The notes under the pieces are model-generated. The model saw only the letters and a list, made by a program, of their open reading frames with translations, was not told the origin of the DNA and did not search any database. A DNA stretch of 64,000 bases, from positions 62,001 to 126,000 of the IMG/VR virus record IMGVR_UViG_3300046005_000547; one strand, given 5' to 3'. The position numbers and the translations under genes were made by a program. The number at the start of each line of letters is the position of its first letter. The stretch's first letter is position 1. Shown here piece by piece: positions 6,238-53,377 of this stretch.

Positions 6238-8538
6238 ATGATTGAACATTTAAAAACAATTGAACAACAATATCAAGTATTAACTGAATTAGAACATATC
6301 AGAAAACGTGTTGGTATGTATGCAGGTAGTCCTGTATTAGAAGAACATGAAGAATTCATCTATTCTATCCAAAACAATAAAATGGAATTACAAACCATTT
6401 CTTATATTCCAGCATTGATTAAGATTATCTCGGAAGGAATTGACAACGTAGTTGATGAACATAACAGAAATCCAAAAAAGATTAACGAATTGAAATTATC
6501 AATTAAAGATAATGAAATCATTATTTCTGATAATGGCGGTATTCCTGTACAAATTCATGCAGATTTCGGTAAATATGTTCCTGAAATTATATTTGGTACA
6601 TTACGTTCTGGTTCTAATTATTCAGATGATGATGCTCAATCCCTGATAGGAACAAATGGATTAGGAGCGAAATTAATTTCTGTTCTAAGTGAATACTTTA
6701 TTGTTGAGACATCTGATGGTTCTAATTATTTCCATCAAGAATATAAAAATGGAATGTCAGAACGTTCTGAACCCGTTATCACTAAATCAAAGAAACATTT
6801 TACAACATTAACATTTAAACCAGATTTAGAATATTTTGGTTTGGAATCATTTGATGAACATCATACATTAAAAATCATTAGACGATTGGTTGATGTTGCC
6901 GCCAATAATCCTTTATTGAAGGTGTATTTCAATGATGAAAAATTCAATGTATCTGCGTTCGATGATTACATTTCATTATATTCAGAAAGTTATGTATATG
7001 ATTCAACTGATGATTGGAAAATTGGTTTGTCTGCGTCTTCTGGTTTCAATCAGACCAGTTTTGTTAATAGTGTAGAAACGTATATGGGTGGAACTCATGT
7101 TAATTACGTTGTAAATCAGATTACAGAGAAACTCAGAGCTTACGTCAAAAAGAAACATAAGATTGATATTAAACCATCTGATATCAAAAGTCATTTACAT
7201 GTATTTGTTTCATGTAAAATCAATCGACCAAAGTTTTCCAGTCAGACCAAAGAAAACATGATTAGCACTATAACAGATTTTGGTTCATCATGGTCTTGTT
7301 CAGATAAATTCATCAATAAGATTATTACATTGGAAGTTGTACAATCAATTTTGGATTGGGCGGAAGCAAAGGAAAATGCTCTAAAGAATGCAGAATTACG
7401 CAAATTGAATAAATCTGTTGACAAATTGAATCCGGCAAGAGTGGACAAGTTTGAAGACGCTAATGAGAAGAAAGATAGAAGTAAGTGTACAATTTTCCTT
7501 ACAGAGGGTAACTCGGCAATGGGGGCGATAATGTCTGCCAGAGACCCTGAATTACATGGAGCTTTTGCGCTTAAAGGTAAACCATTAAATGTGACGGATA
7601 TTGATGCCAAAAAGTTAATGGAAAATAATGAATTCAAAAGTATTCTAACAATCATGGGGTTGAAACTGGGTGAACAAGTCACACCAATGACTCCATTACG
7701 TTTTGGTAAAATCTGTTTTCTAACGGATGCGGATTGTATTACAGAAGAACATTATGTGTTGACAGAATCTGGCGAAAAACTTATCTCAGATGTTAATCCG
7801 TTAGAAGATAAAGTGTTGACGCATTTGAATCAATATGCAGTAGTGGAATATGTTAACATTAAATCAACAGATGTTGTAATCAGAATCACTTCTGGTAATG
7901 ATATTGTTGAAGGTACACCTGAACATAAACATGTAATCTTTAGAGATGGTTGGGATCTTCCAAAAAAATATATGTTGAAAGAAATTCTACCAACGGATAT
8001 GATAATCAAATATATTGATGGACAACAAATCAATCATCCCATTGATTCTATTGAAACTATCGAAAAAACTATAACAACATATGATTTAACAGTTAAAGGT
8101 CATCATACATTTTATGTTAGACATAAAGATTCTGAAAATTATATCTTAACGCATAATTGTGATGGTTCTCATATCATTGGTCTGTTAATTAACATGTTTC
8201 ATTCATTCTGGCCTGAATTGTTTGAATTAGGATATATCTACAGATTCAGAACCCCATTGATTAAAGTCAATGTTGGTAAAGACGTATTAGAATTCTATGA
8301 TGAAAAAGAGTTTGATGAATGGAAATCCAAGAACACAAAAAAGTTCACATCAAAATACTTCAAAGGATTAGGTACATCCACGGCAAAGGATTTCAAAGGA
8401 TACCTAGCTAATTCCGATAAGAATATGGTACAATATACAATTGATGACATTAAAGATTCAGATTCAATTAAATTGGCATTCTCCAAGAATTCAGATTCAG
8501 CTGATTTACGCAAACAATGGTTAAACATCGAAGGTTAA
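6238..8538 (+). CDS. Type II DNA topoisomerase large subunit (gp39+gp60 fused, GyrB/ParE-like) with mini-intein
   Basis: EHIRKRVGMYAGS, GHKL motifs EGIDN / DNGG / GTNGLGAK, TEGNSA, LKGKPLN, Toprim TDAD|CDGSHI, KYFKGLGTS. Confidence 0.92.
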   Translation: MIEHLKTIEQQYQVLTELEHIRKRVGMYAGSPVLEEHEEFIYSIQNNKMELQTISYIPALIKIISEGIDNVVDEHNRNPKKINELKLSIKDNEIIISDNGGIPVQIHADFGKYVPEIIFGTLRSGSNYSDDDAQSLIGTNGLGAKLISVLSEYFIVETSDGSNYFHQEYKNGMSERSEPVITKSKKHFTTLTFKPDLEYFGLESFDEHHTLKIIRRLVDVAANNPLLKVYFNDEKFNVSAFDDYISLYSESYVYDSTDDWKIGLSASSGFNQTSFVNSVETYMGGTHVNYVVNQITEKLRAYVKKKHKIDIKPSDIKSHLHVFVSCKINRPKFSSQTKENMISTITDFGSSWSCSDKFINKIITLEVVQSILDWAEAKENALKNAELRKLNKSVDKLNPARVDKFEDANEKKDRSKCTIFLTEGNSAMGAIMSARDPELHGAFALKGKPLNVTDIDAKKLMENNEFKSILTIMGLKLGEQVTPMTPLRFGKICFLTDADCITEEHYVLTESGEKLISDVNPLEDKVLTHLNQYAVVEYVNIKSTDVVIRITSGNDIVEGTPEHKHVIFRDGWDLPKKYMLKEILPTDMIIKYIDGQQINHPIDSIETIEKTITTYDLTVKGHHTFYVRHKDSENYILTHNCDGSHIIGLLINMFHSFWPELFELGYIYRFRTPLIKVNVGKDVLEFYDEKEFDEWKSKNTKKFTSKYFKGLGTSTAKDFKGYLANSDKNMVQYTIDDIKDSDSIKLAFSKNSDSADLRKQWLNIEG
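7735..8157 (+). mobile_element. Mini-intein (141 aa) in the topoisomerase Toprim DxDxD motif
   Basis: Begins CITEEH, block B GTPEH, block F TYDLTV, ends LTHN followed by Cys. Confidence 0.9.
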
Positions 8539-10471: not shown

Positions 10472-10495
10472 TAAAAACAATCGTATTGTTTTAGA

Positions 10496-10870
10496 ATCCC
10501 ATCCGCTGAAAAGTTGATGGGATTTTTATTGCGTAAAATATACATTCTAAATGATTCTTAAAACATCCATTATTTGTCCGTTAATCCATCTTAATGATAT
10601 ATGTCAATCAACTCTACAGGACTATTTGAATCCATCTTAAAACAACAAATAATTGGACAGGATTTAATGTTAACATCGAATCAATAAATTCACTGTATCG
10701 AGAACATCTTAAAGATTCATTATCGCTATTCTAGACATCGAGTTTGTAAATATCAACATAATAATACTTCTTGACTTTTCCAGCAAATTCCATTATAGTA
10801 GACTATGTCGACGTTTCAGTTAGTGTATATTACTACTTGATTATTCTTTTATATTACTACAAGATTCTTT
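10496..10870 (+). repeat. Dispersed ~470-bp family unit 1 (terminator, conserved boxes, promoter, start motif)
   Basis: catccattatttgtcc, caatcaactctacagg, aatccatcttaaa, TTGACT-N17-TATAGT, agactatgtcgacgtttcagtta and tatattactacaaga are shared with the 41.9-44.1 kb array. Confidence 0.9.
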
Positions 10871-10941
10871 TCGATTTATCTTTCTTTTTATAATTTTTAA
10901 CATATAATTTTAATCTTTAAACAAACAATGAGGGATTTACA

Positions 10942-11583
10942 ATGACATTATCGGCAGGAACACTTAGAGCAAGACTTGAATACAAACCAGAAGCTGGAGT
11001 ATTTGTTGGTAGATTAGATAGAGCCCGTAAGGGTACATTTGACAAGAAAGGATATATGGTAATCAATATTGATGGTAAGAAATATCTAGGTCATCGATTG
11101 GCATATCTTTACATGAATGGTAAATTTCCTGAACATGAAGTGAGTTTCAAAGATAAGAATACATCAAATTGTAAATGGGATAATCTAATTGAAGTTAATC
11201 CAACACAAAGAGCTTTATTATCTAAATCTGATACAAGTTCAAAATCTGGAGTAAAGGGATTGAATTTAGATAAACGAGGGTTCTACGTGGCAAGAGTGAC
11301 TCTTGATAAGAAACCCATTCAGAAATCATTCAAGTTGGACCAAAAAGATGAAGCTGTTAAATGGTTGGAATCAATCAGAGAATCTATTGGCGTCAATAAA
11401 GTGAAATCTAAAACCAACACTGGCGGGTATTATTATGACGTCAATCATAAATGGTTGAAAGATAAAGACAAACCAGTTATATTAAAGTTGACTCCAGTGG
11501 TTAAACAAGAACAACCGAAAGTTATAACAAAATTTGAATACGGACTTTCATTGTTATCTAATCTAGTGGAACAGTATTCGTAA
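10942..11583 (+). CDS. HNH_3-AP2 homing-endonuclease-derived protein with degenerate catalytic residues
   Basis: GYMVINIDGKKYLGHRLAYLYMNGKFP is the typical HNH_3 lead-in, but the usual IDH..DN reads VSF..NC; SKSGVKG...YVARV...EAVKW is AP2-like. Confidence 0.75.
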   Translation: MTLSAGTLRARLEYKPEAGVFVGRLDRARKGTFDKKGYMVINIDGKKYLGHRLAYLYMNGKFPEHEVSFKDKNTSNCKWDNLIEVNPTQRALLSKSDTSSKSGVKGLNLDKRGFYVARVTLDKKPIQKSFKLDQKDEAVKWLESIRESIGVNKVKSKTNTGGYYYDVNHKWLKDKDKPVILKLTPVVKQEQPKVITKFEYGLSLLSNLVEQYS

Positions 11584-11591
11584 TCTAAAGA

Positions 11592-11995
11592 ATCCCAGAC
11601 GTCTTAATTGACTCTGGGATTTTTATTGGATAAAATTTACATAATTGGTTTGTTGAACTGATACAGGAACATCCATTATTTGTCCAATAATCCATCCTAG
11701 TGGAATCTTTGTATAATACGTCAATCAACTCTACAGGATACATTGAATCCATCTTAAATCAACAATATGGGCGTTTTAAATTGAACATAATCGTCGAAAC
11801 TGTAAATTCAACATATCGAAAGAGACATCGAGTATTCTTAAGATGAAATAATGTATCGAGTCTGTAAATTACAATCATCGAGAAACTCCTTTCGAAATCG
11901 ATAAAAAGACAGTATACTAGACTATGTCGACGGTTTGAGTTAGTTCTATAGATTCAATTAAGTTTTCTTTTATATTACTTCAAGACTCTTTACAT
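11592..11995 (+). repeat. Dispersed ~470-bp family unit 2
   Basis: Terminator at 11592-11624, the same boxes, TTTCGA-N17-TATACT, agactatgtcgacggtttgagtta; abuts the gp17 stop. Confidence 0.9.
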
Positions 11996-12001
11996 AATAT
12001 A

Positions 12002-13981
12002 TTAGAAATGATATACTTCCACTTTATCTTCATCCAAACCGTCATTAATATATCCTACAGGTAACATTTGTTGGTCGATATAATCCATCTGTTGATTATA
12101 CAATTCCTTTCTAATGTCGACATCTCCCATATCCTTGATAAACGACGTTGAACATAACCAAGCAAATATAACACAACACATCACTAGATCGTCATGATTA
12201 GGTGGATCCGCAGAGTAACTACCTTGTCTTTCGATAAACACAGAAAACTCCTGTATAATATCAGGATCGAATATCAACAACTTAGATTCCTCAATCAACG
12301 ACTTCAATGTCATACATCCAATTCGTTTAATCTTCTTATCCATATTCAATCCCACTTCCATTGTTCCTGAAAATGATTCACATGGTATCTGTCCCTTTGG
12401 TGTCTTCTTAATGGAAATCAAATTCTCGTATTCCAAATCATCCTGAAGTATCTGTGCCACCTCCTTCGAACAATTTATCTCCACCAAAATGAATGCCTCG
12501 TTATACTCCATACCTATTTTATACAGGATATTTGGATATAACATAGGGCTAATCTTATTATCTCTATACTTACCTACAATCTTATACGGGAAATTCGTCA
12601 CATCGAAAATAACGGCTGATGAATAATCCCCACCAACACCCTTCGATGTATCCGCCGATATAATATACTGATGCCCTTCAATAGGTGCTTCCTGTATATC
12701 TAATCCATCTCTTGAATAAATGTATGGAATCGGTGACATCGATGAAATAGATGATGAATTTATAAGTGTGGCAGATGAACCTAAGAATTCACATAACACC
12801 TCTTGATTGAATTTAATCTCACCTAATATCTTTAACTGTTCATCTGCCCAAGTTGGATCTCGTTCTGGATGTTCGCTCCAATGTACAGTGAATGGTACAA
12901 ATCCGTTAGTTCCTTGTTGAGCATCATTCCAATATTTCCAAAAATGATTGTATCCTAACGGAGTTGACGTCAATACAACTTTTGTTTCTTTACCAGAGGA
13001 AATAGTAGGATACACAGAAGCGAAGAATGCGTCGGCGACGGCATTAGGAATAATTGCCGCTTCGTCCACGTATAAGAAATTACAATTATGTGAAATTACT
13101 CCATTAGAATAATAACAATGGACATCTTCAACAGTGTCTATATCGTAAACAGTTTCTGGTGTAATCTCAACAATAGATGAAATGATTTTATCCGATAGAA
13201 TATCATTTACATTTAAATCTTCGCATCTAATCCATTCTCCATTTATTTTAAATCTATGATCCAGTGTTGAATTGATATGAATGTCATCTGTAAATTTTAA
13301 TTGTAATAATCGTTCCGGCGTTCCTTGATTCAAAACTCCTTTAAAAGATTTGAAACCATAAGGAGTTTTGATTTTGAACGATTCTTTATATGAATTGTAT
13401 AATTCCTCTATAGAAATATCAAAAACATAATCCCCGTCCAAAATGGTAACAATGGTTTCTCCTGTTACACAAGACTTACCCCTGATTCCAGATGCAGAAG
13501 TTGCGGCAGTGAATATCTTAGAACCATTTTCTAAATGCATATCACCTTTGTTCAAGGATAGTACACCGTGTTGTAACCATTTCGGTAAAGATTCATACAT
13601 TAATTGTATACGACTTAGTACCTCTCTAGCAGCCGCGGCTTTATTTGCTAAAATGGCGGTAGTCTTATGGTTATTGAATAATGTGTAATGTAATATGTAT
13701 GCTGAAGTTACCGTAGTTTTTCCGAGCTGGCGCCCAATTAATGCTAAAACCTTGCGTTCACTGTGGAGTAAGCGAACATAATCCTTTTGAAACGGATACA
13801 TTTCAAAATTCACTAATCCCCTATCCAATGAAACAACTTTACAGTATGTAACAATAAAATAACAAGGATCTTGTTTGCATTTAATGTATTCTTCTATTTG
13901 TTCTTGAGTGAAATCAACTTTATATCCAGTTGGTTTTAAATTTTCATTACCATTATAACCAAGTAATTTATTATCTGCCAT
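12002..13981 (-). CDS. Terminase large subunit (gp17) with mini-intein
   Basis: YNGNENLK, EYIKCKQDP, Walker A GRQLGKTT, RGKS|CNFLYVDE Walker B, STPLG, FNQEVLCEFLGS, HDDLVM nuclease motif. Confidence 0.95.
   Translation of the reverse strand: MADNKLLGYNGNENLKPTGYKVDFTQEQIEEYIKCKQDPCYFIVTYCKVVSLDRGLVNFEMYPFQKDYVRLLHSERKVLALIGRQLGKTTVTSAYILHYTLFNNHKTTAILANKAAAAREVLSRIQLMYESLPKWLQHGVLSLNKGDMHLENGSKIFTAATSASGIRGKSCVTGETIVTILDGDYVFDISIEELYNSYKESFKIKTPYGFKSFKGVLNQGTPERLLQLKFTDDIHINSTLDHRFKINGEWIRCEDLNVNDILSDKIISSIVEITPETVYDIDTVEDVHCYYSNGVISHNCNFLYVDEAAIIPNAVADAFFASVYPTISSGKETKVVLTSTPLGYNHFWKYWNDAQQGTNGFVPFTVHWSEHPERDPTWADEQLKILGEIKFNQEVLCEFLGSSATLINSSSISSMSPIPYIYSRDGLDIQEAPIEGHQYIISADTSKGVGGDYSSAVIFDVTNFPYKIVGKYRDNKISPMLYPNILYKIGMEYNEAFILVEINCSKEVAQILQDDLEYENLISIKKTPKGQIPCESFSGTMEVGLNMDKKIKRIGCMTLKSLIEESKLLIFDPDIIQEFSVFIERQGSYSADPPNHDDLVMCCVIFAWLCSTSFIKDMGDVDIRKELYNQQMDYIDQQMLPVGYINDGLDEDKVEVYHF
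13085..13471 (-). mobile_element. Mini-intein (129 aa) in terminase, just before Walker B
   Basis: Begins CVTGET, block B STLDH, block F VYDI, ends ISHN followed by Cys. Confidence 0.9.
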
Positions 13982-13983
13982 GT

Positions 13984-15132
13984 TTAATTCCTTTTAAACA
14001 TAATATCGAATGAAGTATAAACATGTTCTGGATTTTCTACATATCCATTAACATCTTCCATGAGTGTGTCCAAATCAATGTCATTTAAAACTTCTGTCCA
14101 ACCAAATTCACCATAATCGTCTTTTTTAATGTAATTCTTATACTTACGTTTTAATAACTGTTCGGTTTGGAATGCATGATTTATATTTTCCATCTTCTGA
14201 AACATAATTGTATTGCATGTATTCAATAAATGTAATGGATATCTATGATGTAATTTTGTTTTAAATGTAATACCAATTTTAATTTTATCGTCAAATTGTA
14301 TAACATAAAAATATCCATCTTCGGTTAATTCTTTACTCCATAACGATCTAAAATTGACTTTGGATGTTTTTATTTTAGATCTAGATTGATATAATTCATT
14401 TGCTAATTCAACATCACCATTAGTTTTATTAAGAGCCCAATCAAATGAAGATGAATCTTTTTTTCTATTAGATTCATCAATAAGATCTTGTGTTCTAGCA
14501 TTCAGAGTATTTTGCCAATTTATTTGTCTTTGTTCCCAAAATGCTTTACCTTCAATTTCTCCATATTTAGAAATACATTTTTCTAATGTAAACTTGCATG
14601 TGGTGCTAATTATTTCTAACGCTTCCTCTTCGGAACGACCTCTACTCGTGTGATACTCAATGGTGTTGAATATGTTATTATTTTCACGTTTTGTGTCACT
14701 AGCAGTTTTAAACAATTCCTGTATATGATTTTCTACATAGTCGTCAGGTAATTCTTCATATTTGATAAACTTCTTAGAATAAGGTGATAATCGACCACCG
14801 TGTTGATATGCTGGGTTCTTATCACCTTTAATTCTGTTGCATTTAGATACGCAAACTATAGGTCCATATTTCTCTCTGTATTCTAATTGAGATAATCCGT
14901 GGGTCTTAGGATGTTCTGCTAGATCTCTGGTTCTGAATCCACAGACCCCGCATTCAACATATTCGTCCTTGTCCATATCGTCTGGAAATTTAATTCTACT
15001 ACGTTCAATTGTAGTTTTCCATCTAGCATTAAATGCTGATATTTTTTTACATTTATCGGAACATAATGTGTTCAATCTATTATTGGGAATGAATGGAGTT
15101 TCGCAAACCTTACATGTAATTTCTTTAAACAT
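13984..15132 (-). CDS. Putative free-standing homing endonuclease (Zn-finger N-terminus, helical repeat module, GIY-YIG/T5orf172-like C-terminus)
   Basis: CKVC...C, ECGVCG; RGRSEEEA...TLEKCISKYGEIEG; GYFYVIQ...KIGIT...AFQTEQLL. Confidence 0.65.
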   Translation of the reverse strand: MFKEITCKVCETPFIPNNRLNTLCSDKCKKISAFNARWKTTIERSRIKFPDDMDKDEYVECGVCGFRTRDLAEHPKTHGLSQLEYREKYGPIVCVSKCNRIKGDKNPAYQHGGRLSPYSKKFIKYEELPDDYVENHIQELFKTASDTKRENNNIFNTIEYHTSRGRSEEEALEIISTTCKFTLEKCISKYGEIEGKAFWEQRQINWQNTLNARTQDLIDESNRKKDSSSFDWALNKTNGDVELANELYQSRSKIKTSKVNFRSLWSKELTEDGYFYVIQFDDKIKIGITFKTKLHHRYPLHLLNTCNTIMFQKMENINHAFQTEQLLKRKYKNYIKKDDYGEFGWTEVLNDIDLDTLMEDVNGYVENPEHVYTSFDIMFKRN

Positions 15133-22910: not shown

Positions 22911-24361
22911 TATTTTGAATCCTTACTTAGAACCAATCCTCTCCAAGTTGTACCACCATCACTAGTGAAAAATCCTAGAATATCTACTCCAGAAGTAATC
23001 AACGACGGAACAGTTCCTCCAGCCCATTTAATACCCGACCACCAAGTTATAATTGAACTCCCACCATTTGTTAATTCAATAACGAATGAACTCGTGTATC
23101 CAGATGTTGCTACATTACTAACAGTAAATGTAGTTGCACCAGAAATAGTTTTAGTGAAGAACGAACCTAAAGATAAATCGATATTGGCAGCAGCAACTGT
23201 GGTTTTAACGTCTCTGATACCAGAAAATGTATTGATACCAGAAAATGTATTATTTGATGTGAATAGATTAAACCAACTGTTATCCCCTTTCAAGAACGTA
23301 CTTGCACTTGGAGTTCCGGTAGAACCCATTCTGGATGGATTGATTGTTCCAGACAATAATGTAGCGGCAATGTTACCAGATGTTACAGTTCCTAATGTCG
23401 TTATACTAGCAGATCCAGCAGATGGAGCATAAGATGTCGATGACGTGTAAGCGGCTGTTCCTAATGCACCGCCAGAACCGATGTTTAATGTAGATCCATC
23501 TGTTCCAATTAAACCTAACGTGTTAGATACAGTTAATGTTTTTGATGTAGTGCCACCAGCAACTGAGAATCCAGTTGTAAAAGATGAAAATGAAACACCA
23601 TTAATAGTTTTACCAGTTAATGCTGAAGCAATGTTACTAGAAGCAATTGTTCCTGAAATTAAATTTCCTGGAATGTTACCAGTAGATACAGTTCCTAATG
23701 TCGTTATACTAGCAGATCCAGCAGATGGAGCATAAGATGTCGATGACGTGTAAGCGGCTGTTCCTAATGTACCACCAGAACCGATGTTTAATGTAGATCC
23801 ATCTGTTCCCATTAAACCTAACGTGTTAGATACAGTTAATGCTTTTGATGTATTTCCTCCGGAAACAGAGAATCCGGTTGTAAAAGATGAAAATGAAACA
23901 CCATTGATAGTTTTACCAGTTAATGCTGAAGCAATGTTACTAGAAGCAATTGTTCCTGAAATTAAATTTCCTGGAATGTTACCAGTAGATACAGTTCCTA
24001 ATGTAATTATACTAGCAGATCCTGTTGCTGGGGCATAAGATGTCGATGACGTGTAAGCGGCAGTCCCTAATGTACCACCAGAACCGATGTTTAATGTAGA
24101 TCCATCTGTTCCCATTAAACCTAGCGTGTTAGCTACAGTTAATGCTTTTGATGTATTTCCTCCGGAAACAGAGAATCCGGTTGTAAAAGATGAAAATGAA
24201 ACACCATTGATAGTTTTACCAGTTAATGCTGATGTGATATTATCAGAAGCAACTGTCCCTAATGTAATGTTTGATGCATTTAAAGAAGTTATACCAGAAC
24301 CATTACCAAGCAAAATCGAATTCGGAACTCCAATTTTATTTGTATTGCGTAAATAAGACAT
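22910..24361 (-). CDS. Gly/Ser/Thr-rich tail fibre protein with 101-aa tandem repeats
   Basis: Three near-identical repeats; C-terminal domain IDLSLGSFF...WAGGTVPSL...DILGFFTSDGGTTWRG. Confidence 0.75.
   Translation of the reverse strand: MSYLRNTNKIGVPNSILLGNGSGITSLNASNITLGTVASDNITSALTGKTINGVSFSSFTTGFSVSGGNTSKALTVANTLGLMGTDGSTLNIGSGGTLGTAAYTSSTSYAPATGSASIITLGTVSTGNIPGNLISGTIASSNIASALTGKTINGVSFSSFTTGFSVSGGNTSKALTVSNTLGLMGTDGSTLNIGSGGTLGTAAYTSSTSYAPSAGSASITTLGTVSTGNIPGNLISGTIASSNIASALTGKTINGVSFSSFTTGFSVAGGTTSKTLTVSNTLGLIGTDGSTLNIGSGGALGTAAYTSSTSYAPSAGSASITTLGTVTSGNIAATLLSGTINPSRMGSTGTPSASTFLKGDNSWFNLFTSNNTFSGINTFSGIRDVKTTVAAANIDLSLGSFFTKTISGATTFTVSNVATSGYTSSFVIELTNGGSSIITWWSGIKWAGGTVPSLITSGVDILGFFTSDGGTTWRGLVLSKDSK
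23380..24232 (-). repeat. 303-bp tandem repeat (about 3 copies) inside the fibre gene
   Basis: Equivalent positions at 23481, 23784 and 24087; nearly identical at DNA level. Confidence 0.9.
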
Positions 24362-25220: not shown

Positions 25221-28200
25221 TTAAGACGTAGCAATCGCTCTTAGGTTTCTCACTCTAGGAACTTTCGCTGGATTATCAGAATACATAACAACTTTGACCG
25301 CAAATGATTTAAATGATTCAAATGTTTTATCGCCATATACATAAGAGATATTATCCAATTTGTATTCATCAATGATAAAATCATCATTGTTTCTTGAATA
25401 AGATTTTGTTCCAGTTAATGGTAATAGAATGTAATCTTTACCTTTGAAATTAGAATAATCTTCATTTTGAATCAATTTAACATAAACTTCAATTTCAGTA
25501 CCATATTGTCTATTTACATCCAAGATAACGCGAACGCCGGTTGCATCAAATCCTTCTGACAACGTTACTTTTTTGGTTACATATTTAGATAACGCATCAC
25601 CATCAGATGGGTCTGTTTCCTGTTTAATTAAATTCATTTTTGGATTTATTAAATTATGGATGAACTTGGTATTGATTTTCTGTTTTTGAATAATAGGTGA
25701 TACGTTATTATCCGTTGACGACAACACAGTTTTCAATTTATAAGCAGAAGCAGGTTTTGTTCTTGATGACAATAGAACATCTTTGTTATTATCAACTTCA
25801 TGATAATCAATGAAATTGCCAGTTAATGAAACTGAATACTTAGATGATGTTCCTGGAATAACATTTTCTGGAGAATTCAAATGTACAATATCCGTTTCGA
25901 AATTTGTATTGTTTGGTTTCATTTCCAATACAATTTCTTGATTTGTGTTTGTATCAAATTCGCATTTGTATAATCTAAACATCAAATCTTTTAGTTGGTC
26001 TGCGTTCCATGTTCTGGCATTTTGTGACATAAAGAAAGAACCAACAGAACCATCTGGATTATTTTCAGAAATGATTTTACCATTCGATACATCAATTTGA
26101 CCTAATTCGCCAACAAACACTTTATATTCTTTAGAAGAAGACCCGATGATAATAGAGTATTCTCCTGGAGGAATATAAATTGGATCTGAGAACGTAAAGG
26201 TCGTTGGAACAGGAGTAATTACACCAACCAAAGATGAAGGAACATTAACAGATGAATTCTGTAATTCAACTCTAGAAAATTCAAGTTTAGAATCCGATTT
26301 AGGATACCCATTAACAGTTTTTCTTAATTCAATCCATACAGGAATATTGGTATCAGATGGTTTAGAGTAAAAGAAAATATCCGTTTTACTCAAAAACAAA
26401 CCATTTGGGTAATCATCTGGCGACACATAAAACGTTTGAGCAACTGGATCCAATGAGAATGGTTTACCAATATCAGATTTAAATGAACCCGTTGTCGTTT
26501 TTCCATCATCCAATGTAGCAGTCAATTTAATGTCAAAATCTCCATGGAATCCTTTAGATAAAGTGATTACACCTTGACGGAAATCCCCATTGAATGACGT
26601 TACATCTAATGTAGCAGTACCTCTTGATACAACATTACCCGCAGAAGGAACATCAACAGATAAAGAAACAGAACCCGTGTATTTTTTAGCACCAACAGCC
26701 GATCTTGCATCAATATCTAAAACACCAATTGTATATGGAATATGATATTCATATTTGTATCCTAATGCCAATGTTTTCTTTTCTGCCGCAGATATATCTG
26801 AGAATACGATAATTGGAGCAAAATTCGCAGGTTTATCTTTATTCAATACATTCTCTGAACCCGTTAATTTATTACCAGAACTCGATGGAGATACATTCAC
26901 TGGAATTGTAATAGAATTAGAAGTGTTTGATTTAACAGAAGAACCATTAACAAACACCGTTATATCAGCACTTTTGCTTATAGAGTAATTTGCATTGAAT
27001 TTAAGTTTTATGGTGGTAGAATATGTTTTGTTTGCGCCAGATACAGTTCCAACCGTTAATGCAGGAGATGTATTATTTTTATAATCCGTTCCATTAACAA
27101 GAACCGAAGTTAAATTAACAACATTATCTCCGATTGTCCAACCAAATGGTATAATAGTACCAGTATCCAAATACGTTGTATCAACTCTAAATGAAATCTC
27201 ACCTGATGTTTCATATACATCAGTCGTTTGTAATGATGTTATATTGATAGTGGCAGCCGAAGCAGGAGCTTCTTTAATGATAATCGAATTACTAACATCA
27301 CCAACAGAGAATATGGCAGAAGAAGATGTCGTATTAGATACATTATCATTTACTGCAACAACTGGAACAATATAAGAATCAATAAAATCTTTTCTTAATG
27401 TAATCAATTCATTATTGGATGCAGTTGAACAACTAATCAAATTTGGATTGAAAATCAATTTAGAAGAAGTCTCTGTTTTATAAGTGTCCGTCACCTTTAC
27501 ATTGAATTTTTCACCTTCAACAACCTCTGTTATTGGACTACCATTAGATTCAAACGAAATGCTTCTATATGGTACAGATACATTTATGAAATTGGCGGTT
27601 GTTGTAGATTTTGTTGATAGAATACTGGCATCAGATGCTCTACCACTAACAGATAATGTCATGACTTCATTTAAAATAATTTTATCCGCTGGAGTGGCAT
27701 TTTTAAAATAAAATGTTTTAGATGAATTTCCTTTTGGTAATGTATAAGAAACAATCGTTGGTTGGTTCGAAATTAAAGAACCATCCACATTACAAGGGGT
27801 TATGTTTGCAGAAGAAACGTTAAATGTTAAATTTAAAATAGATCCATCATTAGAGATGTTTGATGATTTCACTGTTACACTAGCAATAGATTTCAACGAT
27901 CCATCATTTTGTTTTGTACCAACCGCAGTAGATAACGTATCGCAATCTGAACTTATTTCATAAGAACCTGTTTCAGAAACGCCCAATGAACATTTTCTAA
28001 CCGTTTTGGTTTCCGTTGAACCTGCATCTTTTGTGTAGAATTTAATATCTTTACTTGTGGATACAATGTAACCGGCAGTTATTTTGTAATAGAAATCAAA
28101 TCTTCTTTCACCATTAACATCTTTGTAATTTTGTAATTTTACGTATCCACTTGGTAAAACAGTTAAAGTGTTTTGGAATGCATCATAATATGTTATTCCA

Positions 28201-31200
28201 GTTCCAATAGCAGCTGATGTAGCATTATCCCAAATCTTCAATAAGAAATAATCATCAACCATCGTTCCCAGTGTTGTAATACTTCCAGAAGATATTTTAT
28301 CTTGGATAGTGTCTTCTGCATTTATATAGAACCCAGAATCACCTTTAGTGTTTATACTAATACCACCCGTAGTGCTACCATTCGATACACTAATTTTAAA
28401 ATCTCCAGTTTTACCAGAAATGTTTTTAATGTTAACGGAAGCAACGCCTCTAAAGTTTATTGCTGGTGTTAAATTACCACTGACGTCTATAGATGTTATA
28501 TTAGTTGTTGAAGCCACTTCTGATGTATTAACATAAAATACATCAATTTTAACATCTGTTGATAAATTCAATGAATTAGAATTGATAATCTTTAATGAAT
28601 GATTATCTACGTATCTATCAAAATTATTTGGATTAATACTAACCAATCCAGTTGAATATTTTGGAACTGGATTGATTGAATTTGATAATGTATACGATTT
28701 CACCCCATTTTTAAATACAACAGATTGAATTTCATTTGAGAAAGCAATGTTTGTGTTATCTGATTTAATTTGAATGATTCTAATATAAAATGTATCATTC
28801 GCATTTTTAGAATCTGTATTCAAATTAACGGAAAATCCATTATTGAAATTAGGGACAGAATAATACAATACGTTACTTGTACCAAATTTAGAAACAATGT
28901 TTGAATTGGTTGGAGTGACATTTGTTAATGTATTGTAATTACTAGATACAACAAAATTACTTGGAACTACGGTCAATAAAGAATACGGATCGTTTGGTGA
29001 AATTAAAACGTAAGTCGTTGTAGTTCCACTAATGTTACTTGACACTTTATAATTTTCAACAACATTATATTTCATCTGAACAGAAGCATTATTTGTAACA
29101 TCATTACTCAACGTAATCGTATCAACAAAAGATGGAGCATTCTGTAATTTAAGAACACCGACACCGGGAACATAACTTGGTGTATCATCAAAAGATTGTT
29201 CATTCTGTAATTTAAGAACACCGACACCGGAAACATAACTTGGTGTATCATTATATGTCGATTTGTAACTAATACATTCTACTTTAATGGGAGCAACCAA
29301 AGAAGAACTTGAAACAGGAGTAGAAGTGTTATTCTGAACATAAACAGTTCTTGTTACAAATTTACTGGAATCAAATGAATCTTCAACTGTAATAGGAGAT
29401 GTTATTCTTACTCCATTAACATCCGTGGACAAATCAACCAAATCAGATGAAATTCTATATTTCAAAGAAGACGTTGCCGTGGCAGAAGATGCTCTAATTT
29501 TGATTTCAATTTTCTTAGGTTTATCTGAATCCGTTACGTTGACGACTGTTTGGAATTCTTCTTTTGTTGTTGCATCATAAAATTTAACTACAAACGAAAT
29601 ATCCAATTTCTTTAACGTAATTTCTTGGTCAGTTTTTGTTGCTAATTTAGTTGTACCAGTAGTGTTATCCGTTACAGTCAAAGCTAATTGATGGTCCGTG
29701 GATAATCCTGATATAACATTTCTAGCGAAAGTAACTGATGTATTTCCACCAACAGATAATGTAGCAGAACCCGTTAGATTTGAACTAGACAACTTATTCA
29801 ACGCAACAGAATTATTGACGCTTGATAACACCCAAGAGATATTTCTAGATACATAATTATCTAATGCAGCAATGATGTACGTTACAGTTTCTCCATCATC
29901 TAAGATTTTATCATCACATCCAGATTTAGAAATACCGAAAGAGGGTGTTGTCGCATTTACATTTAATGTATCTTCACCATTTGTTAATGGATGTTTAACA
30001 CCTGCAACAATTCTCAAATTATTTGGAGCAGTTGATTTTAATGTAAATGTCTTAGGAGTTGCCAATGACGTTAAAGTAGCGGATCCAGATAAAATTTGAC
30101 CATCAGCGAATACAGAAGAACCACTTGTTGCTATCTCGCTTGTTCCATCTAATCCCTCCACTATTGTACCAGAACCACCAACGACCTTCAAATACCAATT
30201 TACGATATCCGCTGGATTAACATTGGTTGATGTAAATTTAACTTTGAATGTTTGAGTTGTCGTAGAAGATAATGAAGGTAAATCCACACCACCAGTATTT
30301 GTAAATTGAGTACCAACACTTTTCTTTGCTGCTTTTAATAATGTTAAATGTACAGAATTCTTTGTATTACCATTACAATCCGTTACGATATTAAACAATG
30401 AATCGTCTAAATTACCAATGTAATTCTTAATGGTTACAGTGAAAGTAGCGACACCAGAACCATCTAGATAAACTGTTGAATTTGATAAACTATACAAACT
30501 AGAAACCAAATTTGAAACAGAAACTTTAACTTGTTTTTCAGAATTTGTTTTAGATGCATATGCACTACCATAAGAAGAAGTCAACGTACAAGTTAAAATA
30601 TCTCCTGATACAATAGTAGACCCTTCAGCAACTTCACTACCAGCGCGTTTTACAGATAATGTAAAGTTCTCTTGAGTTTTATCAACGTACAATAATGTTT
30701 GAGCACCACCACCTTTATTGTCATCAGATAATGTCAATCTAATCGTATAAGGTTTATCTAATGTTCCGATTGTCGTGACAGAAACATTTTTGCTTGTTTT
30801 TGTGAAATAACCAGCACCACTAGAAACAGAGAACTTACTCGAGTAAGAAGCAATTGGACTAAAACTATTTCCACTCTCACTCACTTCCAATAGATATGGA
30901 ACTTGTTCTGCAGCATATACAGGAAAATCGTAATAATTTGTGTTTAAAATAAACGATGCAGATTGATTTGGTATAATATGACCAAAAATATCACCAGATG
31001 TAGCAACATTAAAGTTTTTCTTTACATATTTACCAACAACCAATGTCTTTTTAGAAATAGAAACACCTAGATCGTCTCCGAAGATGAATTCAAATGAACC
31101 ATTTTTATCTAAGAAATCACCAACTGAAATTGGGTATTTAATAGATTGAGTTGGAGTTGATGTATTTGTATGGAATGAATCTACGTTCGCTCCAGTTACA

Positions 31201-34200
31201 ATCATTCCATCTTTTTTGACTGTTAATGTGATTACTCTATCTGTTTCGCAATTTGTTGATGTAAATGTCAAATCAATTGTATTGTTTGTATCTACATCAA
31301 CTTTAATTGGAGACTCAACAGAGTATTCCGTATTAACAGGATTCAATAATTTAATCGATTCTGTTACAACACTACCATAAGAGAATTCTGGGTAATCAAT
31401 TGCTGGTTTAGATGTATCAGAACCAACTGTAATTGTTAAATTAATCACTCTTTCAGATTGAAAGATTAAATCTTCATGTGGTTTAAGATTTATAACAGCG
31501 TCACCTAATGCATCTACAGAAAATGTAAATGAATTCAAATTTGAAATTGGAGTAATTACACTACCAACTGTTACATTTGAAATACCAAATCCAGAAGATG
31601 TTCCACCAGTTACATTAATAGAACCTGTATACGTAACCTTTGGATTCCCATTTTGGACATTAAATTTGAACGAAACCAATTCACCTTCTTTAACAATATA
31701 TGTCGAAGGTAAAACGTTATAAACGGCAGATGGTCTAGTTTTTTTAATTTTGGTCAATGGATTAACGGATACAACTTCATCGGTGATAACTGGAATCGGA
31801 GATTCATCTGTATATCGTAACGATTGAGCAATGTTATATGTTGTTTCAGCAGTTGATGATGAATACTGAATACCAGCTGGTGTGTCTGTAAATGTTACAT
31901 TAAATTTAGATCCCAAGAACATTGCTGGAATATAAATGTATCCTTCATAAGATCCTTTAGAATCAGTGAATTGTTCGGCACTCGATTTTTGACCAGCAAC
32001 TTGCCACCCTTTTTCTTGTATTTCACCTTCAAAGAAATAATAGATTTTTACATTTGGTAACATTCCAGTTAATTTAACTTTTACTACATTTTCTCTTGTA
32101 GTCCCTTGAATCAATTTAACTACATTATATGTTTGACCTTGAACCACTTGATTTTTCTGAGAATTTAATTCCAAGAAATCTTGAGTGTCGGTTATTCCAG
32201 TTGTAATATCAGCAGTTTCACCACCAGGTTTCCAAGAGCCAAAAATAGTAACTTTGGTTCTTTCTGTATTTTCATTACCAATCAATAATTGTCTTGCTGT
32301 ATTTGTGTCTATTGCTTCTTCTTGGAATACAGTGTAATCTGAATCAGGAGTAAGAACAGCGTTACCTTTTGAATTATAAACACTATATGGATTCGCCGAT
32401 ACAGCAGTAGAAGCCATCATTTGTGAATATAAAACTCGTTCCGTGTATGGTAATGTTATTGTATTCTCATGCACACTTGTTGTAATTGGATTATTCGAAG
32501 GACTCAATCCACCCGTATCCAATAAGAACCCAGGACGTAATTCATTATTTTCAAAATCAATTGAGAATTTGAAATTTGAATTATCATTAGAAGGAGCTCC
32601 AATTAGAACTTCTGGATTTGTTACGTCCGCAATGTTATATCCTTTGAACGAATCAACTAAAAAACCATTGTTGAATAACGGAACACCATTATCATCTGTA
32701 AATGTTTTTGTTGATGTTTCCTTTTCAAGTAAAGATAATGAAGTGTAGTATTCAACATTTTCTAAACGTTTATCCAATGTACCAATATCTCTCATGGTAT
32801 ATCGTTTATTTTTGTACAACAATGTTTTTACGTTTGAACTATTGTCTGTGAATGGTTCAAACGTGAATGAACAAATATCCATGACATCTTTACCACTCGA
32901 AGGAGTGATTGGAGAATCATAAGAAGGTTGTCCTTTCAATAACGTAAATGTACCATTTTTATCTAATACCAATTTATCAATACGTTGTAGATAATAATCC
33001 ACATTCACTGTTATGACTTGATTAGATAACGGTAATGTAAATGTATCGAATTCCAAAGAATCTTTACGTTGGACTGGTCTAAAATCAATACAATTTCTCA
33101 ATTTGTATTCAATACCATATCCATCTGTATATTTTGGTAATGATGGATATGGAACAGCAACGTCGTATGAATTTACATAAATTGGACCATCACCAGAATG
33201 TTCAAAATAATCAACAACAATTAAGATATTTTCAGAAACATTAGCATCTTTAATTTTTTTAATGGTTGCATGTAGATAAGAAGAATTAGTTTGACCTTTA
33301 TCAATAGAATATTTGTATGAAACATCCGTCAATTCTACACCTAAAGTAGTGCCTGTGATGTAATATGCTTTGTTATCTTTAATTACAATAGAATTACTTG
33401 GATAATTGTATCCATCAATATAAGTCAATGAATCTCTTGTAATAGGATCCCCTGAATACAAATAGACGCCGACAACTCTGTTAACATCAGACACACCAAT
33501 AGAATTGTTTAATGCGGACGAACTATATTCAAATGCAATACCATAATCTTTTCTTAGAATTTTCGTTCTTGATGCGTTACCAGAATTATAGATTGTTGTC
33601 GTTACACTAACGGTTCCATTGAAAGAAGAATCATTGAAATTCAATTCTGCTGTTGAACTAGAACCAATAGGATTATTAACAGTCAACGTTGAATTTGATG
33701 CATCAATAATACTACCAACAGGGAAGTTGGTTTCATTAGATGATGTCAATACGTTGATGATGTAATGTTCATTGATAGAAGAACCAGTTGATGCATCGAA
33801 ATCTTTATACGCAGAACCAGAAGAAAGAGTACAAACACCATTATATACATTCGCTGAATTGTATGTAATCTTAGAGGTGTATCTTAAATTGTTAATTGAT
33901 TTAACAGTGATATTTGGAACCTGGAAAACCAATAATTGTTTATTTGTATCTTTAATGGTTTCACTAACTGGTTTCAAATGTGATGTTACATTAGAAGCAT
34001 TGGTCCATGTAATATCAGAAACATCTTTGAATTTGTATCCTTTGGTATCAACATCATCCAAGAACAATTTGAATACACCTAATGTTGAATAATCAACACC
34101 AATACAGATTGCAGTTCCAATGATTCTTGAAGCTGAATCAAAGAATGTTAATTCCGTTCTTTTATTTGCCGTTGGTAAGAATCCAGGCGTAATTAAACTC

Positions 34201-41828: not shown

Positions 41829-42131
41829 ATGTTTATTCTGTATGTATTGTTTATATTATTTAATGGCATAGTGAAACGTCAATAATAATCCATCTATTAT
41901 CATCGTTAAATGTTTTTTAATGTTATGTTCAATCAACTCTACAGGATATTCTGAATCCATCTTATATTGGCGAATATCCATGTAGGATTAAATGTTAACA
42001 TCGAATCAACTATAATCATGTATCGAGGATGTCTTAATATAATCCTTTCGATGTATATTGTATCGAGTTTGATTATTGCAAGTTAAAGATTTCTCTTGAC
42101 TTTTCGAGGAAATATCGTTATAGTAGACTAT

Positions 42132-42302
42132 GTCGACGTTTCAGTTATTGCCTTTAAGGTCATTTTTATATTCTTTAATGTCTTCTATATTACTTCAAGA
42201 CTCTTTATCGACAATAATATACTCTATTCTAAACAATAATTCATCATTAAAATCTCTGCGTCTCAGATCCCGATAGAATGTAAAAGTTCTGTTGGGATTT
42301 TT
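42132..42302 (+). ncRNA. Predicted ~170-nt small RNA, unit 3
   Basis: TTGACT-N17-TATAGT promoter, conserved 5' end, terminator at 42267-42302; transcription is inferred. Confidence 0.45.
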
Positions 42303-42604
42303 ATTGGATAAAAATTTACATTATATTCAATTCCATCTTAACATCAAACCATCCATTATTTGTCCAATAATCCACCTTAATGGAATCTTTCCAATATACA
42401 TCAATCAACTCTACAGGATATAACCATTCCATCTTAAAATCCAAATATGGATTTCTATATTAAACAAGAACATCGAAGTTGTAAATTCAACATATCGAAA
42501 GAGTCTTAAAGATGGTGTTCGATAACATTAGACATCGAACTTGTAATAATCATGTATCGAGAAACTCCTTTCGAAATGATAAAAAAGACAGTATACTAGA
42601 CTAT

Positions 42605-42778
42605 GTCGATGTTTCAGTTATTGCCTTTACTTCAATTTTAATATTCTTCTATATCATTATTAGATTCTTTATAGACATTACTACAAGAACATAATATTGT
42701 CTTTATCGAGTAATTATTCATCATAAAATCTCTGCTCCTCAGATCCTGACATGAACTAAACATTATGTCAGGATTTTT
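42605..42778 (+). ncRNA. Predicted ~175-nt small RNA, unit 4
   Basis: TTTCGA-N17-TATACT promoter, terminator at 42743-42778; transcription is inferred. Confidence 0.45.
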
Positions 42779-43077
42779 ATTGGATAAAATTTACATAATC
42801 GGTTTGTTGAACTGATACTGGAACAACCATTATTTGTCCAATAATCCATCCTAGTGGAATCTTCTTGTAATATGTCAATCAACTCTACGAGATATATTGA
42901 TTCCATCTTAAAACAACAATATGGATGTCTATATTAAACAAGAACATCGAAGTTGTAAATTCAACATATCGAAAGACTATTGATAACATCGAAACGGAAT
43001 CTTAGACATCGAGTATGTAAACAACAACGATTAGAAACTCCTTTCGAAATGTCAGAAACTCGGATATACTAGACTAT

Positions 43078-43244
43078 GTCGACGTTTCAGTTAGTGTATC
43101 TATTGTTTTTCTAATATTCTTTATTGTCTTCTATATTACTACAAGACATTATCCTATTCTTTATCGAGTATATTCTATACAATAATCCAACATTAAAATC
43201 TCTGACATTCAGATCCCACCAGATTTATTCTGAGTGGGATTTTT
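43078..43244 (+). ncRNA. Predicted ~165-nt small RNA, unit 5
   Basis: TTTCGA-N17-TATACT promoter, terminator at 43213-43244; transcription is inferred. Confidence 0.45.
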
Positions 43245-43545
43245 ATTGTTTAAAATTTACAATATAACAATCCTATGTTGAATCATTAACATCCATTATT
43301 TGTCCGTTAATCCATCCTAGTGGAATCTTTGTATAATATGTCAATCAACTCTCTGCATGATATTCTGAATCCATCTTAAAACAACAAATATCCACGTTAA
43401 ATCAAACGTAATCATCGAAACAATAAACATCATGTATCGAAAGAGTCTTAAGAACATCGAAACAGAATATCGTTCATCGAGTCTGTATATTACAGGTTAA
43501 GAATACTCCTTTCGAAATGGTAGAAAATGTAGTATAGTAGACTAT

Positions 43546-43706
43546 GTCGACGTTTCAGTTATTACCTTTACTTTCATTAAGTGTTCTTCTATATTACTAC
43601 AAGACTCTTTATAGAGTATAATAATGTCTTTATCGAGCAATTATTCAACATTAAAATCTCTGTCATTCATATCCCGATGAGAACCAATCATTTCATCGGG
43701 ATTTTT
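43546..43706 (+). ncRNA. Predicted ~160-nt small RNA, unit 6
   Basis: TTTCGA-N17-TATAGT promoter, terminator at 43671-43706; transcription is inferred. Confidence 0.45.
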
Positions 43707-44099
43707 ATTGGATTCAATTTACAATATATCAGTTCTGTATTAGTTTGATAACATCCATTATTTTGCTCGTTAATGGACTCTAATGGAACGTTTCCAATAT
43801 ACATCAATCAACTCTACAGGATATAACCAATCCATCTTAAATCAACAATATAGACTGTTAAATTAAACATTAACATCGGAATCAATTATAATCATGTATC
43901 GAAAGAGTCTTAAGAACATCGAAGGATAATCTTTAACATCGAATGTGTAAATTACAATCATCTAGAAACTCCTTTCGAAATCGATAAAAAGACAGTATAC
44001 TAGACTATGTCGACGGTTTGAGTTAGTTCTATTAATATGTTTTAGTATTTTTCTATATTACTTCAAGACTCTTTATAGACTTTATTCTTTTATTATTCC

Positions 44100-44127
44100 T
44101 TTCGATTAACATTTTATTCACTATAAT
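44100..44127 (+). promoter_or_regulatory. Phage promoter TTTCGA-N16-TATAAT for ligase
   Basis: tttcga at 44100, tataat at 44122 followed by aga. Confidence 0.7.
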
Positions 44128-44164
44128 AGAACTCGTTACTTAACTTTATACAGGAAACTTTAAT

Positions 44165-52408: not shown

Positions 52409-52436
52409 TTTCGATTTGACGGATAACCTTTATAAT
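52409..52436 (+). promoter_or_regulatory. Phage promoter TTTCGA-N16-TATAAT
   Basis: Exact motif; leader shared with the copy at 53306. Confidence 0.75.
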
Positions 52437-52476
52437 AGAATTCAAGTTTGTTAATTTTATTTTTAGAGGTTATTTT

Positions 52477-53333: not shown

Positions 53334-53377
53334 AGAATTCAAGTTAGTTAATTTTAAATTCTATTTGAGAGGTTGTT

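What the first reader, a model, noticed from the sequence alone, without database searches (positions are those of the whole stretch)
10496..11995. Nuclease-dead HNH-AP2 gene between two copies of the repeat unit: candidate cognate protein of the array
Seen: ORF 10942-11583 keeps the HNH_3 scaffold and an AP2-like domain, but the catalytic positions are replaced (usual IDH reads VSF, DN reads NC, no final Asn/His). The frame is intact with a GAGG RBS. It is the only gene between repeat units 1 and 2, and the unit-1 promoter reads into it with no terminator I could see. Known: HNH-AP2 proteins are phage homing endonucleases and AP2 is a sequence-specific DNA-binding domain. Inference: a domesticated endonuclease that binds the repeat boxes (initiator, regulator or RNA partner) and may autoregulate. 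Protein plus array would form an undescribed two-part system.
Basis: partly seen in the sequence, partly recalled or inferred. Interest (0 to 1): 0.8.

Follow-up and report, generated by a model that had tools for sequence, protein, structure and literature searches.

The report
Conserved nuclease-dead HNH-AP2 phage gene
A lake-water T4-like jumbo phage carries a homing-endonuclease-like gene that lost its catalytic residues long ago yet is still kept by selection, so it probably binds DNA without cutting it, but nothing shows that it is the dedicated partner of the repeat units around it.

Summary
ORF 10942-11583 (213 aa) is an I-HmuI-like HNH_3 protein with an AP2-like domain. The catalytic positions read S68 and F69 in place of Asp and His, and R90 in place of the metal-binding Asn. 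The structural Asn (N81) is kept. The gene lies between two real ~470-bp repeat units.

The gene is not decaying. It belongs to a well-supported clade of five proteins from freshwater T4-like phages. All five have Phe at the general-base His, and all share a ~60-aa C-terminal extension. dN/dS against the nearest relative is about 0.19; the neighbouring topoisomerase gene gives 0.14.

The "cognate protein of the array" idea is not supported:
- The units are promoter plus leader plus terminator cassettes, with about 30 copies in at least seven arrays of the 234.7-kb genome.
- Their promoters drive several other genes, and another array encloses a conserved 44-aa ORF.
- Three of the five clade members are not next to units.
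- Synteny with the relative breaks at this array.

Best reading: a domesticated, non-cleaving DNA-binding derivative of a free-standing homing endonuclease, carried as cargo of a PeSL-like cassette. Its target is unknown.

The parts
10491..10530 (+). Intrinsic-terminator hairpin with a T run. It ends the upstream operon and marks the start of unit 1.
   Evidence: Folds at -19.1 kcal/mol, z -6.0. Member of repeat family D10.
10491..10941 (+). Repeat unit 1. It holds the terminator, the conserved boxes (ATCCAT boxes, TCAATCAACTCTACAGGA, ACATCGA boxes), the promoter and the conserved leader. Its usual 3' spacer is replaced by the HNH gene.
   Evidence: Alignment A1 of seven units, mean column identity 67%. 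nhmmer E 1.4e-97.
10771..10799 (+). Sigma-70-like promoter of unit 1 (TTGACT, 17 nt, TATAGT).
   Evidence: 10 of 12 consensus matches. The same promoter is conserved in unit 3 and in units elsewhere in the genome. Function is inferred.
10799..10822 (+). Conserved near-palindromic element at the transcription start (TAGACTATGTCGAC...), shared by all units.
   Evidence: Five matches with at most 3 mismatches, against 0 expected. The core 13 bp is found exactly inverted in one unit of the relative (L021 6985-6997).
10866..10894 (+). Possible gene-proximal promoter of the phage-specific class (CTTTTCGA, 14 nt, TATAAT).
   Evidence: Read directly from the sequence. The relative has a clean CTTTCGA-N16-TATAAT at the same place before its orthologue. 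The class is enriched in the window. A weak inference.
10930..10933 (+). Shine-Dalgarno GAGG.
   Evidence: 8 nt upstream of the ATG.
10942..11583 (+). HNH_3-AP2 gene (213 aa), catalytically degenerate: S68 at 11143-11145, F69 at 11146-11148, N81 at 11182-11184, R90 at 11209-11211.
10942..11091 (+). N-terminal beta-sheet domain (aa 1-50) with the clade-specific basic motif EYKPE.G..VG..DR.RKG.
   Evidence: Model pLDDT above 90. Invariant columns in A4.
11092..11223 (+). Beta-beta-alpha (HNH) core, aa 51-94, without the general base and one metal ligand.
   Evidence: Pfam HNH_3. Alignment to I-HmuI. Foldseek to 1u3e.
11248..11388 (+). AP2-like domain (aa 103-149): three strands and a helix.
   Evidence: A sub-threshold Pfam AP2 match in clade member P0007.
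11389..11580 (+). Clade-specific C-terminal extension: a low-confidence linker (aa 154-171) and a terminal helix (aa 197-212).
   Evidence: Present only in the five Phe-clade proteins. Model. No Pfam family matches it.
11590..11630 (+). Intrinsic-terminator hairpin after the gene. It also marks the start of unit 2.
   Evidence: -21.8 kcal/mol, z -6.5.
11588..12001 (+). Repeat unit 2. It is truncated at its 3' end by the terminase gene, which lies on the minus strand.
   Evidence: A1. nhmmer E 1e-115. The terminase ORF is 12002-13981 on the minus strand.
11889..11918 (+). Unit-2 promoter of the CTTTCGA...TATACT class. It points antisense into the 3' end of the terminase gene.
   Evidence: No terminator-like site was found on the + strand downstream, up to 12500.
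41829..44164 (+). Five-unit tandem array (units 3-7) between the baseplate genes (minus strand) and the DNA ligase gene (plus strand). Context for the finding, not part of the gene.
   Evidence: Flanking genes.

Best explanation
The gene encodes a domesticated, non-cleaving derivative of a free-standing I-HmuI-type HNH-AP2 homing endonuclease.

Shown:
- It keeps the DNA-contacting parts of that family (N-terminal beta sheet, beta-beta-alpha core, AP2-like sheet plus helix) and has gained a clade-specific C-terminal extension.
- It lacks the general-base His (Phe69), one metal ligand (Arg90 for Asn) and the Asp next to the His (Ser68).
- The His-to-Phe change arose once, before the five known members diverged. 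Purifying selection has kept the protein since.

Inferred:
- It binds a long asymmetric DNA site as a monomer, like I-HmuI, without cutting.
- It acts as a site-specific DNA-binding factor: a regulator, a blocker of cleavage by related active endonucleases, or an architectural protein.

Its place between two repeat units is best read as cargo position. The ~470-bp units are promoter plus leader plus terminator cassettes, an enlarged analogue of the PeSLs of T4-type phages. They occur about 30 times in the genome, drive other genes as well, and mark a rearrangement boundary. In this phage the gene is read from the sigma-70-like unit-1 promoter, and perhaps also from a proximal CTTTTCGA-TATAAT promoter. 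Transcription ends at the hairpin that starts unit 2. The DNA target of the protein is not established.
For: - Domain identity.
- Catalytic substitutions mapped on I-HmuI D74, H75, N87, N96.
- His is present in 146 of 157 related domains, and Phe only in this clade plus one unrelated protein.
- The five Phe proteins form one clade (99/99) with terminal branches of 0.43-0.56 changes per site (sister-pair stems 0.26).
- All five frames are intact, with conservation spread over all domains.
- dN/dS is 0.19 for this gene and 0.14 for the adjacent topoisomerase gene.
- Units act as general promoter/terminator cassettes.
- Only the terminator hairpin is conserved as RNA structure.
- Other cargo ORF inside an array.
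- Clade members outside arrays.
- Synteny break at the array.
- PeSL concept and Campylobacter phage repeat regions that enclose ORFs: PMC2839356, PMC4546147.
- Precedents for co-option of homing-endonuclease DNA-binding domains (plant AP2 factors, CapR): PMC10448857.
Against: - No experiment or RNA data. No RNA run was listed, and the DNA reads laid were uninformative.
- dS is near saturation (1.86), so the ratio is rough.
- dS of this gene is twice that of its neighbour. The two copies may therefore not be strict orthologues of the same age.
- Loss of activity is inferred from residues alone.
- The contigs of three clade members are short (0.9-8.9 kb). Their phages may carry unit arrays elsewhere, and then the link with the units would be undervalued here.
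Confidence: 0.6

Rival explanations
1. The dead HNH-AP2 protein is the trans-acting partner of the repeat units. It binds their conserved boxes (ATCCAT, TCAATCAACTCTACAGGA or ACATCGA boxes, or the palindromic start-site element). It regulates unit transcription, replication or recombination, and autoregulates through unit 1.
For: - The gene is embedded in a unit array in both phages known to have arrays.
- The units hold about 270 bp of conserved non-coding boxes with no identified binding protein.
- The protein keeps three DNA-binding modules under selection.
- A nuclease whose site lay in a 30-copy repeat of its own genome would be under pressure to lose cleavage. This point is an inference.
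- The P0005 contig ends 8 nt after the stop codon with GCAATCAA, which resembles the start of the TCAATCAACTC box. A weak hint.
Against: - The two array-embedded copies are syntenic, so they count as one event.
- At least six other arrays have no such gene.
- Unit promoters drive unrelated genes, and another ORF is embedded in an array.
- P0005 and P0154 have their own promoter-like sequences upstream, and none of P0005, P0007 and P0154 has a unit motif nearby.
- The start-site element is palindromic, which suits a dimeric repressor better than a monomeric I-HmuI-like protein.
- No additional array-bearing relatives were found to test co-occurrence.
Confidence: 0.18
2. The protein is still an active homing or nicking endonuclease that uses other residues for catalysis, and the gene is an ordinary mobile homing-endonuclease gene.
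For: - Clade members lie at different loci in different phages: after the topoisomerase genes, after nrdA, and after a DUF7206 gene. Mobility would explain this.
- The region is rich in selfish elements: intein-like insertions in the topoisomerase and terminase genes, and a T5orf172-like ORF.
- It sits at a synteny boundary, as reported for nuclease genes in PMC10448857.
Against: - The general-base His is Phe in all five members.
- The Asp position is Ser, Thr or Glu in three of five, and the metal-binding Asn is lost in four of five.
- To my knowledge, no beta-beta-alpha-metal nuclease works without this His (established knowledge of I-HmuI, colicin E9 and I-PpoI).
- No conserved replacement His is specific to the clade.
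Confidence: 0.07
3. A decaying relic of a homing endonuclease gene with no function, kept only by chance or by hitch-hiking inside the cassette.
For: - Protein identity to the relative is lower (55-57%) than for the neighbouring topoisomerase (82%).
- The gene is rare in databases: five sequences.
Against: - Five intact frames of 213-233 codons in AT-rich genomes after branches of about 0.5 changes per site.
- dN/dS is 0.19.
- Invariant residues lie in every domain, including the clade-specific C-terminus.
Confidence: 0.05

Closest known systems
I-HmuI-type HNH_3 homing endonucleases with an AP2 domain (HNH-AP2 or 'IPA-HNH' genes of phages; T5-like phage HNH endonucleases, PHROG 99)
   Same: Same order of domains: N-terminal beta sheet, beta-beta-alpha HNH_3 core, AP2-like domain. 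Free-standing gene with its own promoter and terminator in an intergenic, plastic region of a T4-like phage (PMC10448857).
   Different: The general-base His is Phe and metal ligands are eroded. There is a conserved ~60-aa C-terminal extension. The five proteins form a separate clade under purifying selection.
PeSLs (promoter-early stem-loop cassettes) of T4-type phages
   Same: Repeated composite terminator plus promoter motifs between genes. They flank accessory ORFs, lie in plastic regions and mark recombination boundaries (PMC2839356, PMC4122927).
   Different: The units here are about 470 bp, not tens of bp. They carry about 270 bp of extra conserved boxes and a conserved leader. They form tandem arrays of 2-5 units, many of them 'empty'. 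They use both sigma-70-like and phage-specific promoter types.
Repeat regions of Campylobacter group II T4-related phages (CP21, CP220, CPt10)
   Same: Repeat regions of 1-3 kb split a large T4-related genome into modules of about 30-55 kb. Some enclose ORFs, and module order differs between relatives at these regions (PMC4546147). Here the arrays lie 22-36 kb apart, and synteny breaks at one of them.
   Different: No sequence relationship. The Campylobacter units are 72-86 bp with a 13-nt core and are not described as promoter/terminator cassettes.
Domesticated homing-endonuclease DNA-binding proteins (plant AP2/ERF factors, PLE CapR from T5orf172 genes, I-TevI as autorepressor)
   Same: A DNA-binding scaffold of homing-endonuclease origin used without cleavage (PMC10448857; I-TevI autorepression is from my own knowledge).
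   Different: Those cases keep only the binding domain, or keep an active nuclease. Here the whole HNH scaffold is retained with a dead active site, and no target or function has been shown.

Membership tests
HNH_3 / I-HmuI-like homing endonucleases | Sequence match to the HNH_3 profile and the beta-beta-alpha fold | tested here: met
   Pfam HNH_3 scores 42.6 bits against a cut-off of 24.8. Foldseek's best hit is 1u3e, probability 1.0. The family profile hits 1u3e at 9.5e-6.
HNH_3 / I-HmuI-like homing endonucleases | Catalytic residues: general-base His, adjacent Asp and metal-binding Asn | tested here: not met
   S68, F69 and R90 stand at I-HmuI positions D74, H75 and N96. Only the structural Asn (N81) is kept.
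HNH_3 / I-HmuI-like homing endonucleases | Site-specific DNA cleavage and homing | not testable with these tools
   Needs a nuclease assay. The different loci of clade members are compatible with past mobility but do not show it.
HNH-AP2 architecture | AP2 domain C-terminal to the HNH domain | tested here: met
   The family profile hits AP2 domains of WRI1 (2.5e-6), TEM1 and ERF096. The model has three strands plus a helix. Foldseek gives weak AP2 hits. Pfam AP2 is below threshold on single sequences.
PeSL-like promoter-terminator cassette (for the flanking units) | A repeated motif that joins a stable stem-loop terminator and a promoter in intergenic position | tested here: met
   Hairpins of -19 and -22 kcal/mol with T runs and co-varying stems. 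Conserved promoters. Activity was not measured.
PeSL-like promoter-terminator cassette (for the flanking units) | Small size (tens of bp), one motif directly upstream of each ORF | tested here: not met
   Units are about 470 bp, carry extra boxes and a leader, and are mostly tandem without an ORF.
   Two array-bearing phages both have the gene, but at the same syntenic place. Three other clade members lie on short contigs without units. No further array-bearing relatives were found.
   Needs EMSA, footprinting or DAP-seq.

The most novel reading that the evidence does not exclude
The dead HNH-AP2 protein is the trans-acting factor that recognises the roughly 30 copies of the ~470-bp unit. It might work as an architectural, transcription or origin-organising protein. 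A domesticated homing endonuclease and its multiplied former target would then form a phage-specific cis/trans system that organises a jumbo T4-like genome into modules of about 32 kb.
Probability: 0.15. Interest if true: 0.75.

Novelty: new variant of a known kind. Interest (0 to 1): 0.42.

Why it matters
Homing endonucleases are usually treated as selfish genes that either cut or decay. Here a whole HNH-AP2 scaffold has lost its general base once and then been kept under purifying selection through long divergence in several freshwater T4-like phages. That points to a second life as a DNA-binding protein inside phages themselves. It parallels the origin of plant AP2 transcription factors and of the satellite repressor CapR.

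The finding gives a small, testable protein for asking what such domesticated nucleases do. It also draws attention to an unusually elaborate promoter-terminator repeat family that takes up about 5% of a jumbo phage genome.

Tried and rejected
1. Small minus-strand ORF across the unit boxes (peptide motifs YPVELID and DYWTNNG). It recurs, but stops or frameshifts break it in most units, so I rejected it as coding.
2. Unit transcript as a structured small RNA. There are no Rfam hits and no tRNAs. RNAalifold on 25 unit transcripts from two phages finds only the terminator hairpin.
3. Leaderless peptide starting at the conserved ATG of the leader. Frame length varies from 11 to 48 codons between units, so I rejected it.
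4. Near-identical DNA in sequenced phages: none. The DNA ligase's best match among sequenced phages is about 42% identical.
5. Wider search for arrays.
   - A 16-nt box pattern was too unspecific.
   - A two-box pattern found only the window phage and one relative in IMG/VR, plus chance hits in coding DNA.
   - The single metagenome scan gave two chance hits.
6. RNA evidence: no RNA run was listed.
7. Reads of four lake metagenomes gave only short low-depth pieces, with joints that come from cross-mapping between units. They show no allele lacking the gene.
8. Paralogues of the gene in the window and in about 80 kb of further loci of the same genome: none.
9. The LAGLIDADG_1 Pfam hit on residues 124-169 is below threshold and overlaps the AP2-like helix. 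I treated it as spurious.

Full report
**Where the window comes from.** The window is identical to bases about 62001-126000 of IMG/VR contig 3300046005_000547 (234.7 kb). Runs that hold the region are lake-water metagenomes. Gene content is that of a T4-like myovirus: helicase, two topoisomerase II subunits, large terminase, baseplate wedge proteins and DNA ligase. GC content is about 31%. No sequenced phage is close at the DNA level.

**The gene.** ORF 10942-11583 encodes 213 aa and is preceded by GAGG.
- It matches Pfam HNH_3 (E 4.7e-11) and PHROG 99 (9e-32). T5-like phage HNH endonucleases are 36-38% identical over the first two thirds.
- An AlphaFold model built on 40 homologues has mean pLDDT 85. 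It shows an N-terminal sheet, a beta-beta-alpha core, a three-strand plus helix domain at residues 107-149, a disordered linker and a terminal helix.
- Foldseek ranks I-HmuI first, with weaker AP2-domain hits.
- The family profile hits I-HmuI and plant AP2 domains by sequence. The ESM Atlas neighbours are viral HNH_3 clusters, some of them with AP2.

**The active site.** The alignment to I-HmuI gives these correspondences:

| I-HmuI residue | Role | Window protein |
|---|---|---|
| D74 | next to the general base | S68 |
| H75 | general base | F69 |
| N87 | structural Asn | N81 (kept) |
| N96 | metal ligand | R90 |

Among the best 150 representatives, His occupies the general-base position in 146 of 157 domains.

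**A conserved dead clade.** Exhaustive and word-based searches found only four close full-length relatives: P0002, P0005, P0007 and P0154.
- All have Phe at the His position. The other ligand positions vary: the adjacent Asp is D, D, E and T, and the metal-binding Asn is N, I, R and I in P0002, P0005, P0007 and P0154 respectively. All share a ~60-aa C-terminal extension.
- In a maximum-likelihood tree the five form one clade (99/99), with terminal branches of 0.43-0.56 changes per site (sister-pair stems 0.26). A sixth His-to-Phe protein, from Bradyrhizobium, is unrelated.
- dN/dS between the window gene and P0002 is 0.19 (dS 1.86, near saturation). The neighbouring topoisomerase gene gives 0.14 (dS 0.91).
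- The loss of the general base is therefore old, and the protein has been kept.

**The repeat units.** Seven units of about 470 bp lie in the window: two around the gene and five at 41829-44164. Each unit contains, in order:
- a hairpin terminator whose stems co-vary;
- about 270 bp of conserved boxes;
- a promoter, either TTGACT-17-TATAGT or CTTTCGAAAT...TATACT;
- a near-palindromic element at the start site;
- a conserved leader, then a variable ~60 nt before the next terminator.

A profile of the unit finds about 30 copies in the parts of the genome I fetched. The arrays lie near 41.6, 72.5, 103.8, 140.2, 161.9, 196.3 and 228.7 kb. The three arrays whose flanking ORFs I could read on both sides (41.6, 103.8 and 228.7 kb) lie between divergent gene blocks, and every array fires into the downstream genes.

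The last unit of several arrays reads directly into a protein gene. In another array a conserved 44-aa ORF is embedded in both phages. The CTTTCGA-N-TATAAT promoter type is general in this phage, with 11 copies in the window against 0.11 expected. Partial units precede ordinary genes, for example at 58960-59045. The unit transcript has no conserved structure beyond the terminator, and nothing matches Rfam.

**Gene and units together.** In the window the gene replaces the variable spacer of unit 1. The unit-1 promoter therefore reads into it through an unstructured 137-nt leader, and transcription should end at the hairpin that opens unit 2.

In the only other array-bearing phage (contig 3300046008_000242), the orthologue lies at the same place after the topoisomerase genes. 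There it follows a complete unit with its own terminator, has its own CTTTCGA-N16-TATAAT promoter, and is followed by three units. Synteny between the two phages holds up to the gene and stops at the array.

The three other clade members sit elsewhere, none with unit motifs:
- P0007 lies downstream of nrdA, separated from it by a 52-aa ORF, in a gene-dense 8.9-kb contig.
- P0005 follows a DUF7206 gene.
- P0154 is a stand-alone promoter-ORF-terminator cassette.

**Interpretation.** The evidence supports a nuclease-dead, selected, DNA-binding derivative of a homing endonuclease. It does not single the protein out as the partner of the arrays. The units behave as enlarged PeSL-like cassettes (PMC2839356, PMC4122927). 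They also resemble the module-separating repeat regions of Campylobacter group II phages, some of which enclose ORFs (PMC4546147). The gene's position is what cassette cargo would look like. Nuclease genes at exchange boundaries and co-option of their binding domains are documented (PMC10448857).

**Limits.**
- There are no expression or binding data.
- There are only two array-bearing genomes.
- The contigs of three clade members are short.
- dS is saturated.

Noticed in passing
Contig 3300046005_000547: arrays near 41.6, 72.5, 103.8, 140.2, 161.9, 196.3 and 228.7 kb (window 10491-12001 and 41829-44164; loci L003, L005, L006, L009, L014): About 30 copies of the ~470-bp unit form at least seven arrays spaced 22-36 kb apart, roughly 5% of the genome. 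Those checked on both sides lie between divergent gene blocks, with the units oriented toward the downstream operon.
   Followed up: partly
L021 6985-6997, compared with L021 5757-5769: The 13-bp start-site element TAGACTATGTCGA is present as its exact reverse complement in one unit of the relative, with unchanged flanks. This suggests a symmetric protein-binding site acting at the DNA level.
   Followed up: partly
L006 6140-6274 (-) and L138 1487-1615 (+): A conserved 42-44-aa ORF (MNMFKNQYYGLFDDRIV...) is embedded between units of another array in both phages and is driven by a unit promoter.
   Followed up: partly
window 11585-11752 (-), 42763-42906 (-), 42316-42444 (-): A recurring minus-strand reading frame (YPVELID...DYWTNNG) spans the conserved boxes but is broken in most units. 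It may be the remnant of an old gene start, or coincidental.
   Followed up: yes
window 6238-8538 (+) and 12002-13981 (-): The topoisomerase II large subunit and the large terminase both carry insertions that begin with Cys and end with His-Asn followed by Cys, so they look like mini-inteins. The terminase has sub-threshold Intein_splicing and HINT hits. In the relative the topoisomerase gene is split by an extra 413-aa ORF.
   Followed up: partly
window 13984-15132 (-): A 382-aa ORF next to the terminase gene has weak T5orf172 and MucR-like zinc-finger matches. It may be another free-standing homing-endonuclease-like gene.
   Followed up: no
window 11889-12100 (+): The unit-2 promoter points into the 3' end of the convergent terminase gene, and no terminator was detected downstream. 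It may produce an antisense transcript of a late gene.
   Followed up: no
window 3248, 5471, 10144, 60156 (+): A family of small paralogous genes with conserved 5' ends (M.TF.EFK..VMEEF). One copy lies directly upstream of unit 1.
   Followed up: no
window 25221-35489 (-), 23343-24248, 62658-63089: A 3422-aa ORF lies in the structural block. In-frame tandem repeats of 303 bp (three copies) and 72 bp (five to six copies) lie inside two other large minus-strand ORFs.
   Followed up: no
L234 40-70; window 52430-52450 and 53327-53347: The promoter/leader motif TATAATAGA(A/T)TTCAAGTT is shared between the window phage and the unrelated short contig that carries clade member P0154. This hints that these phages share regulatory signals.
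   Followed up: no
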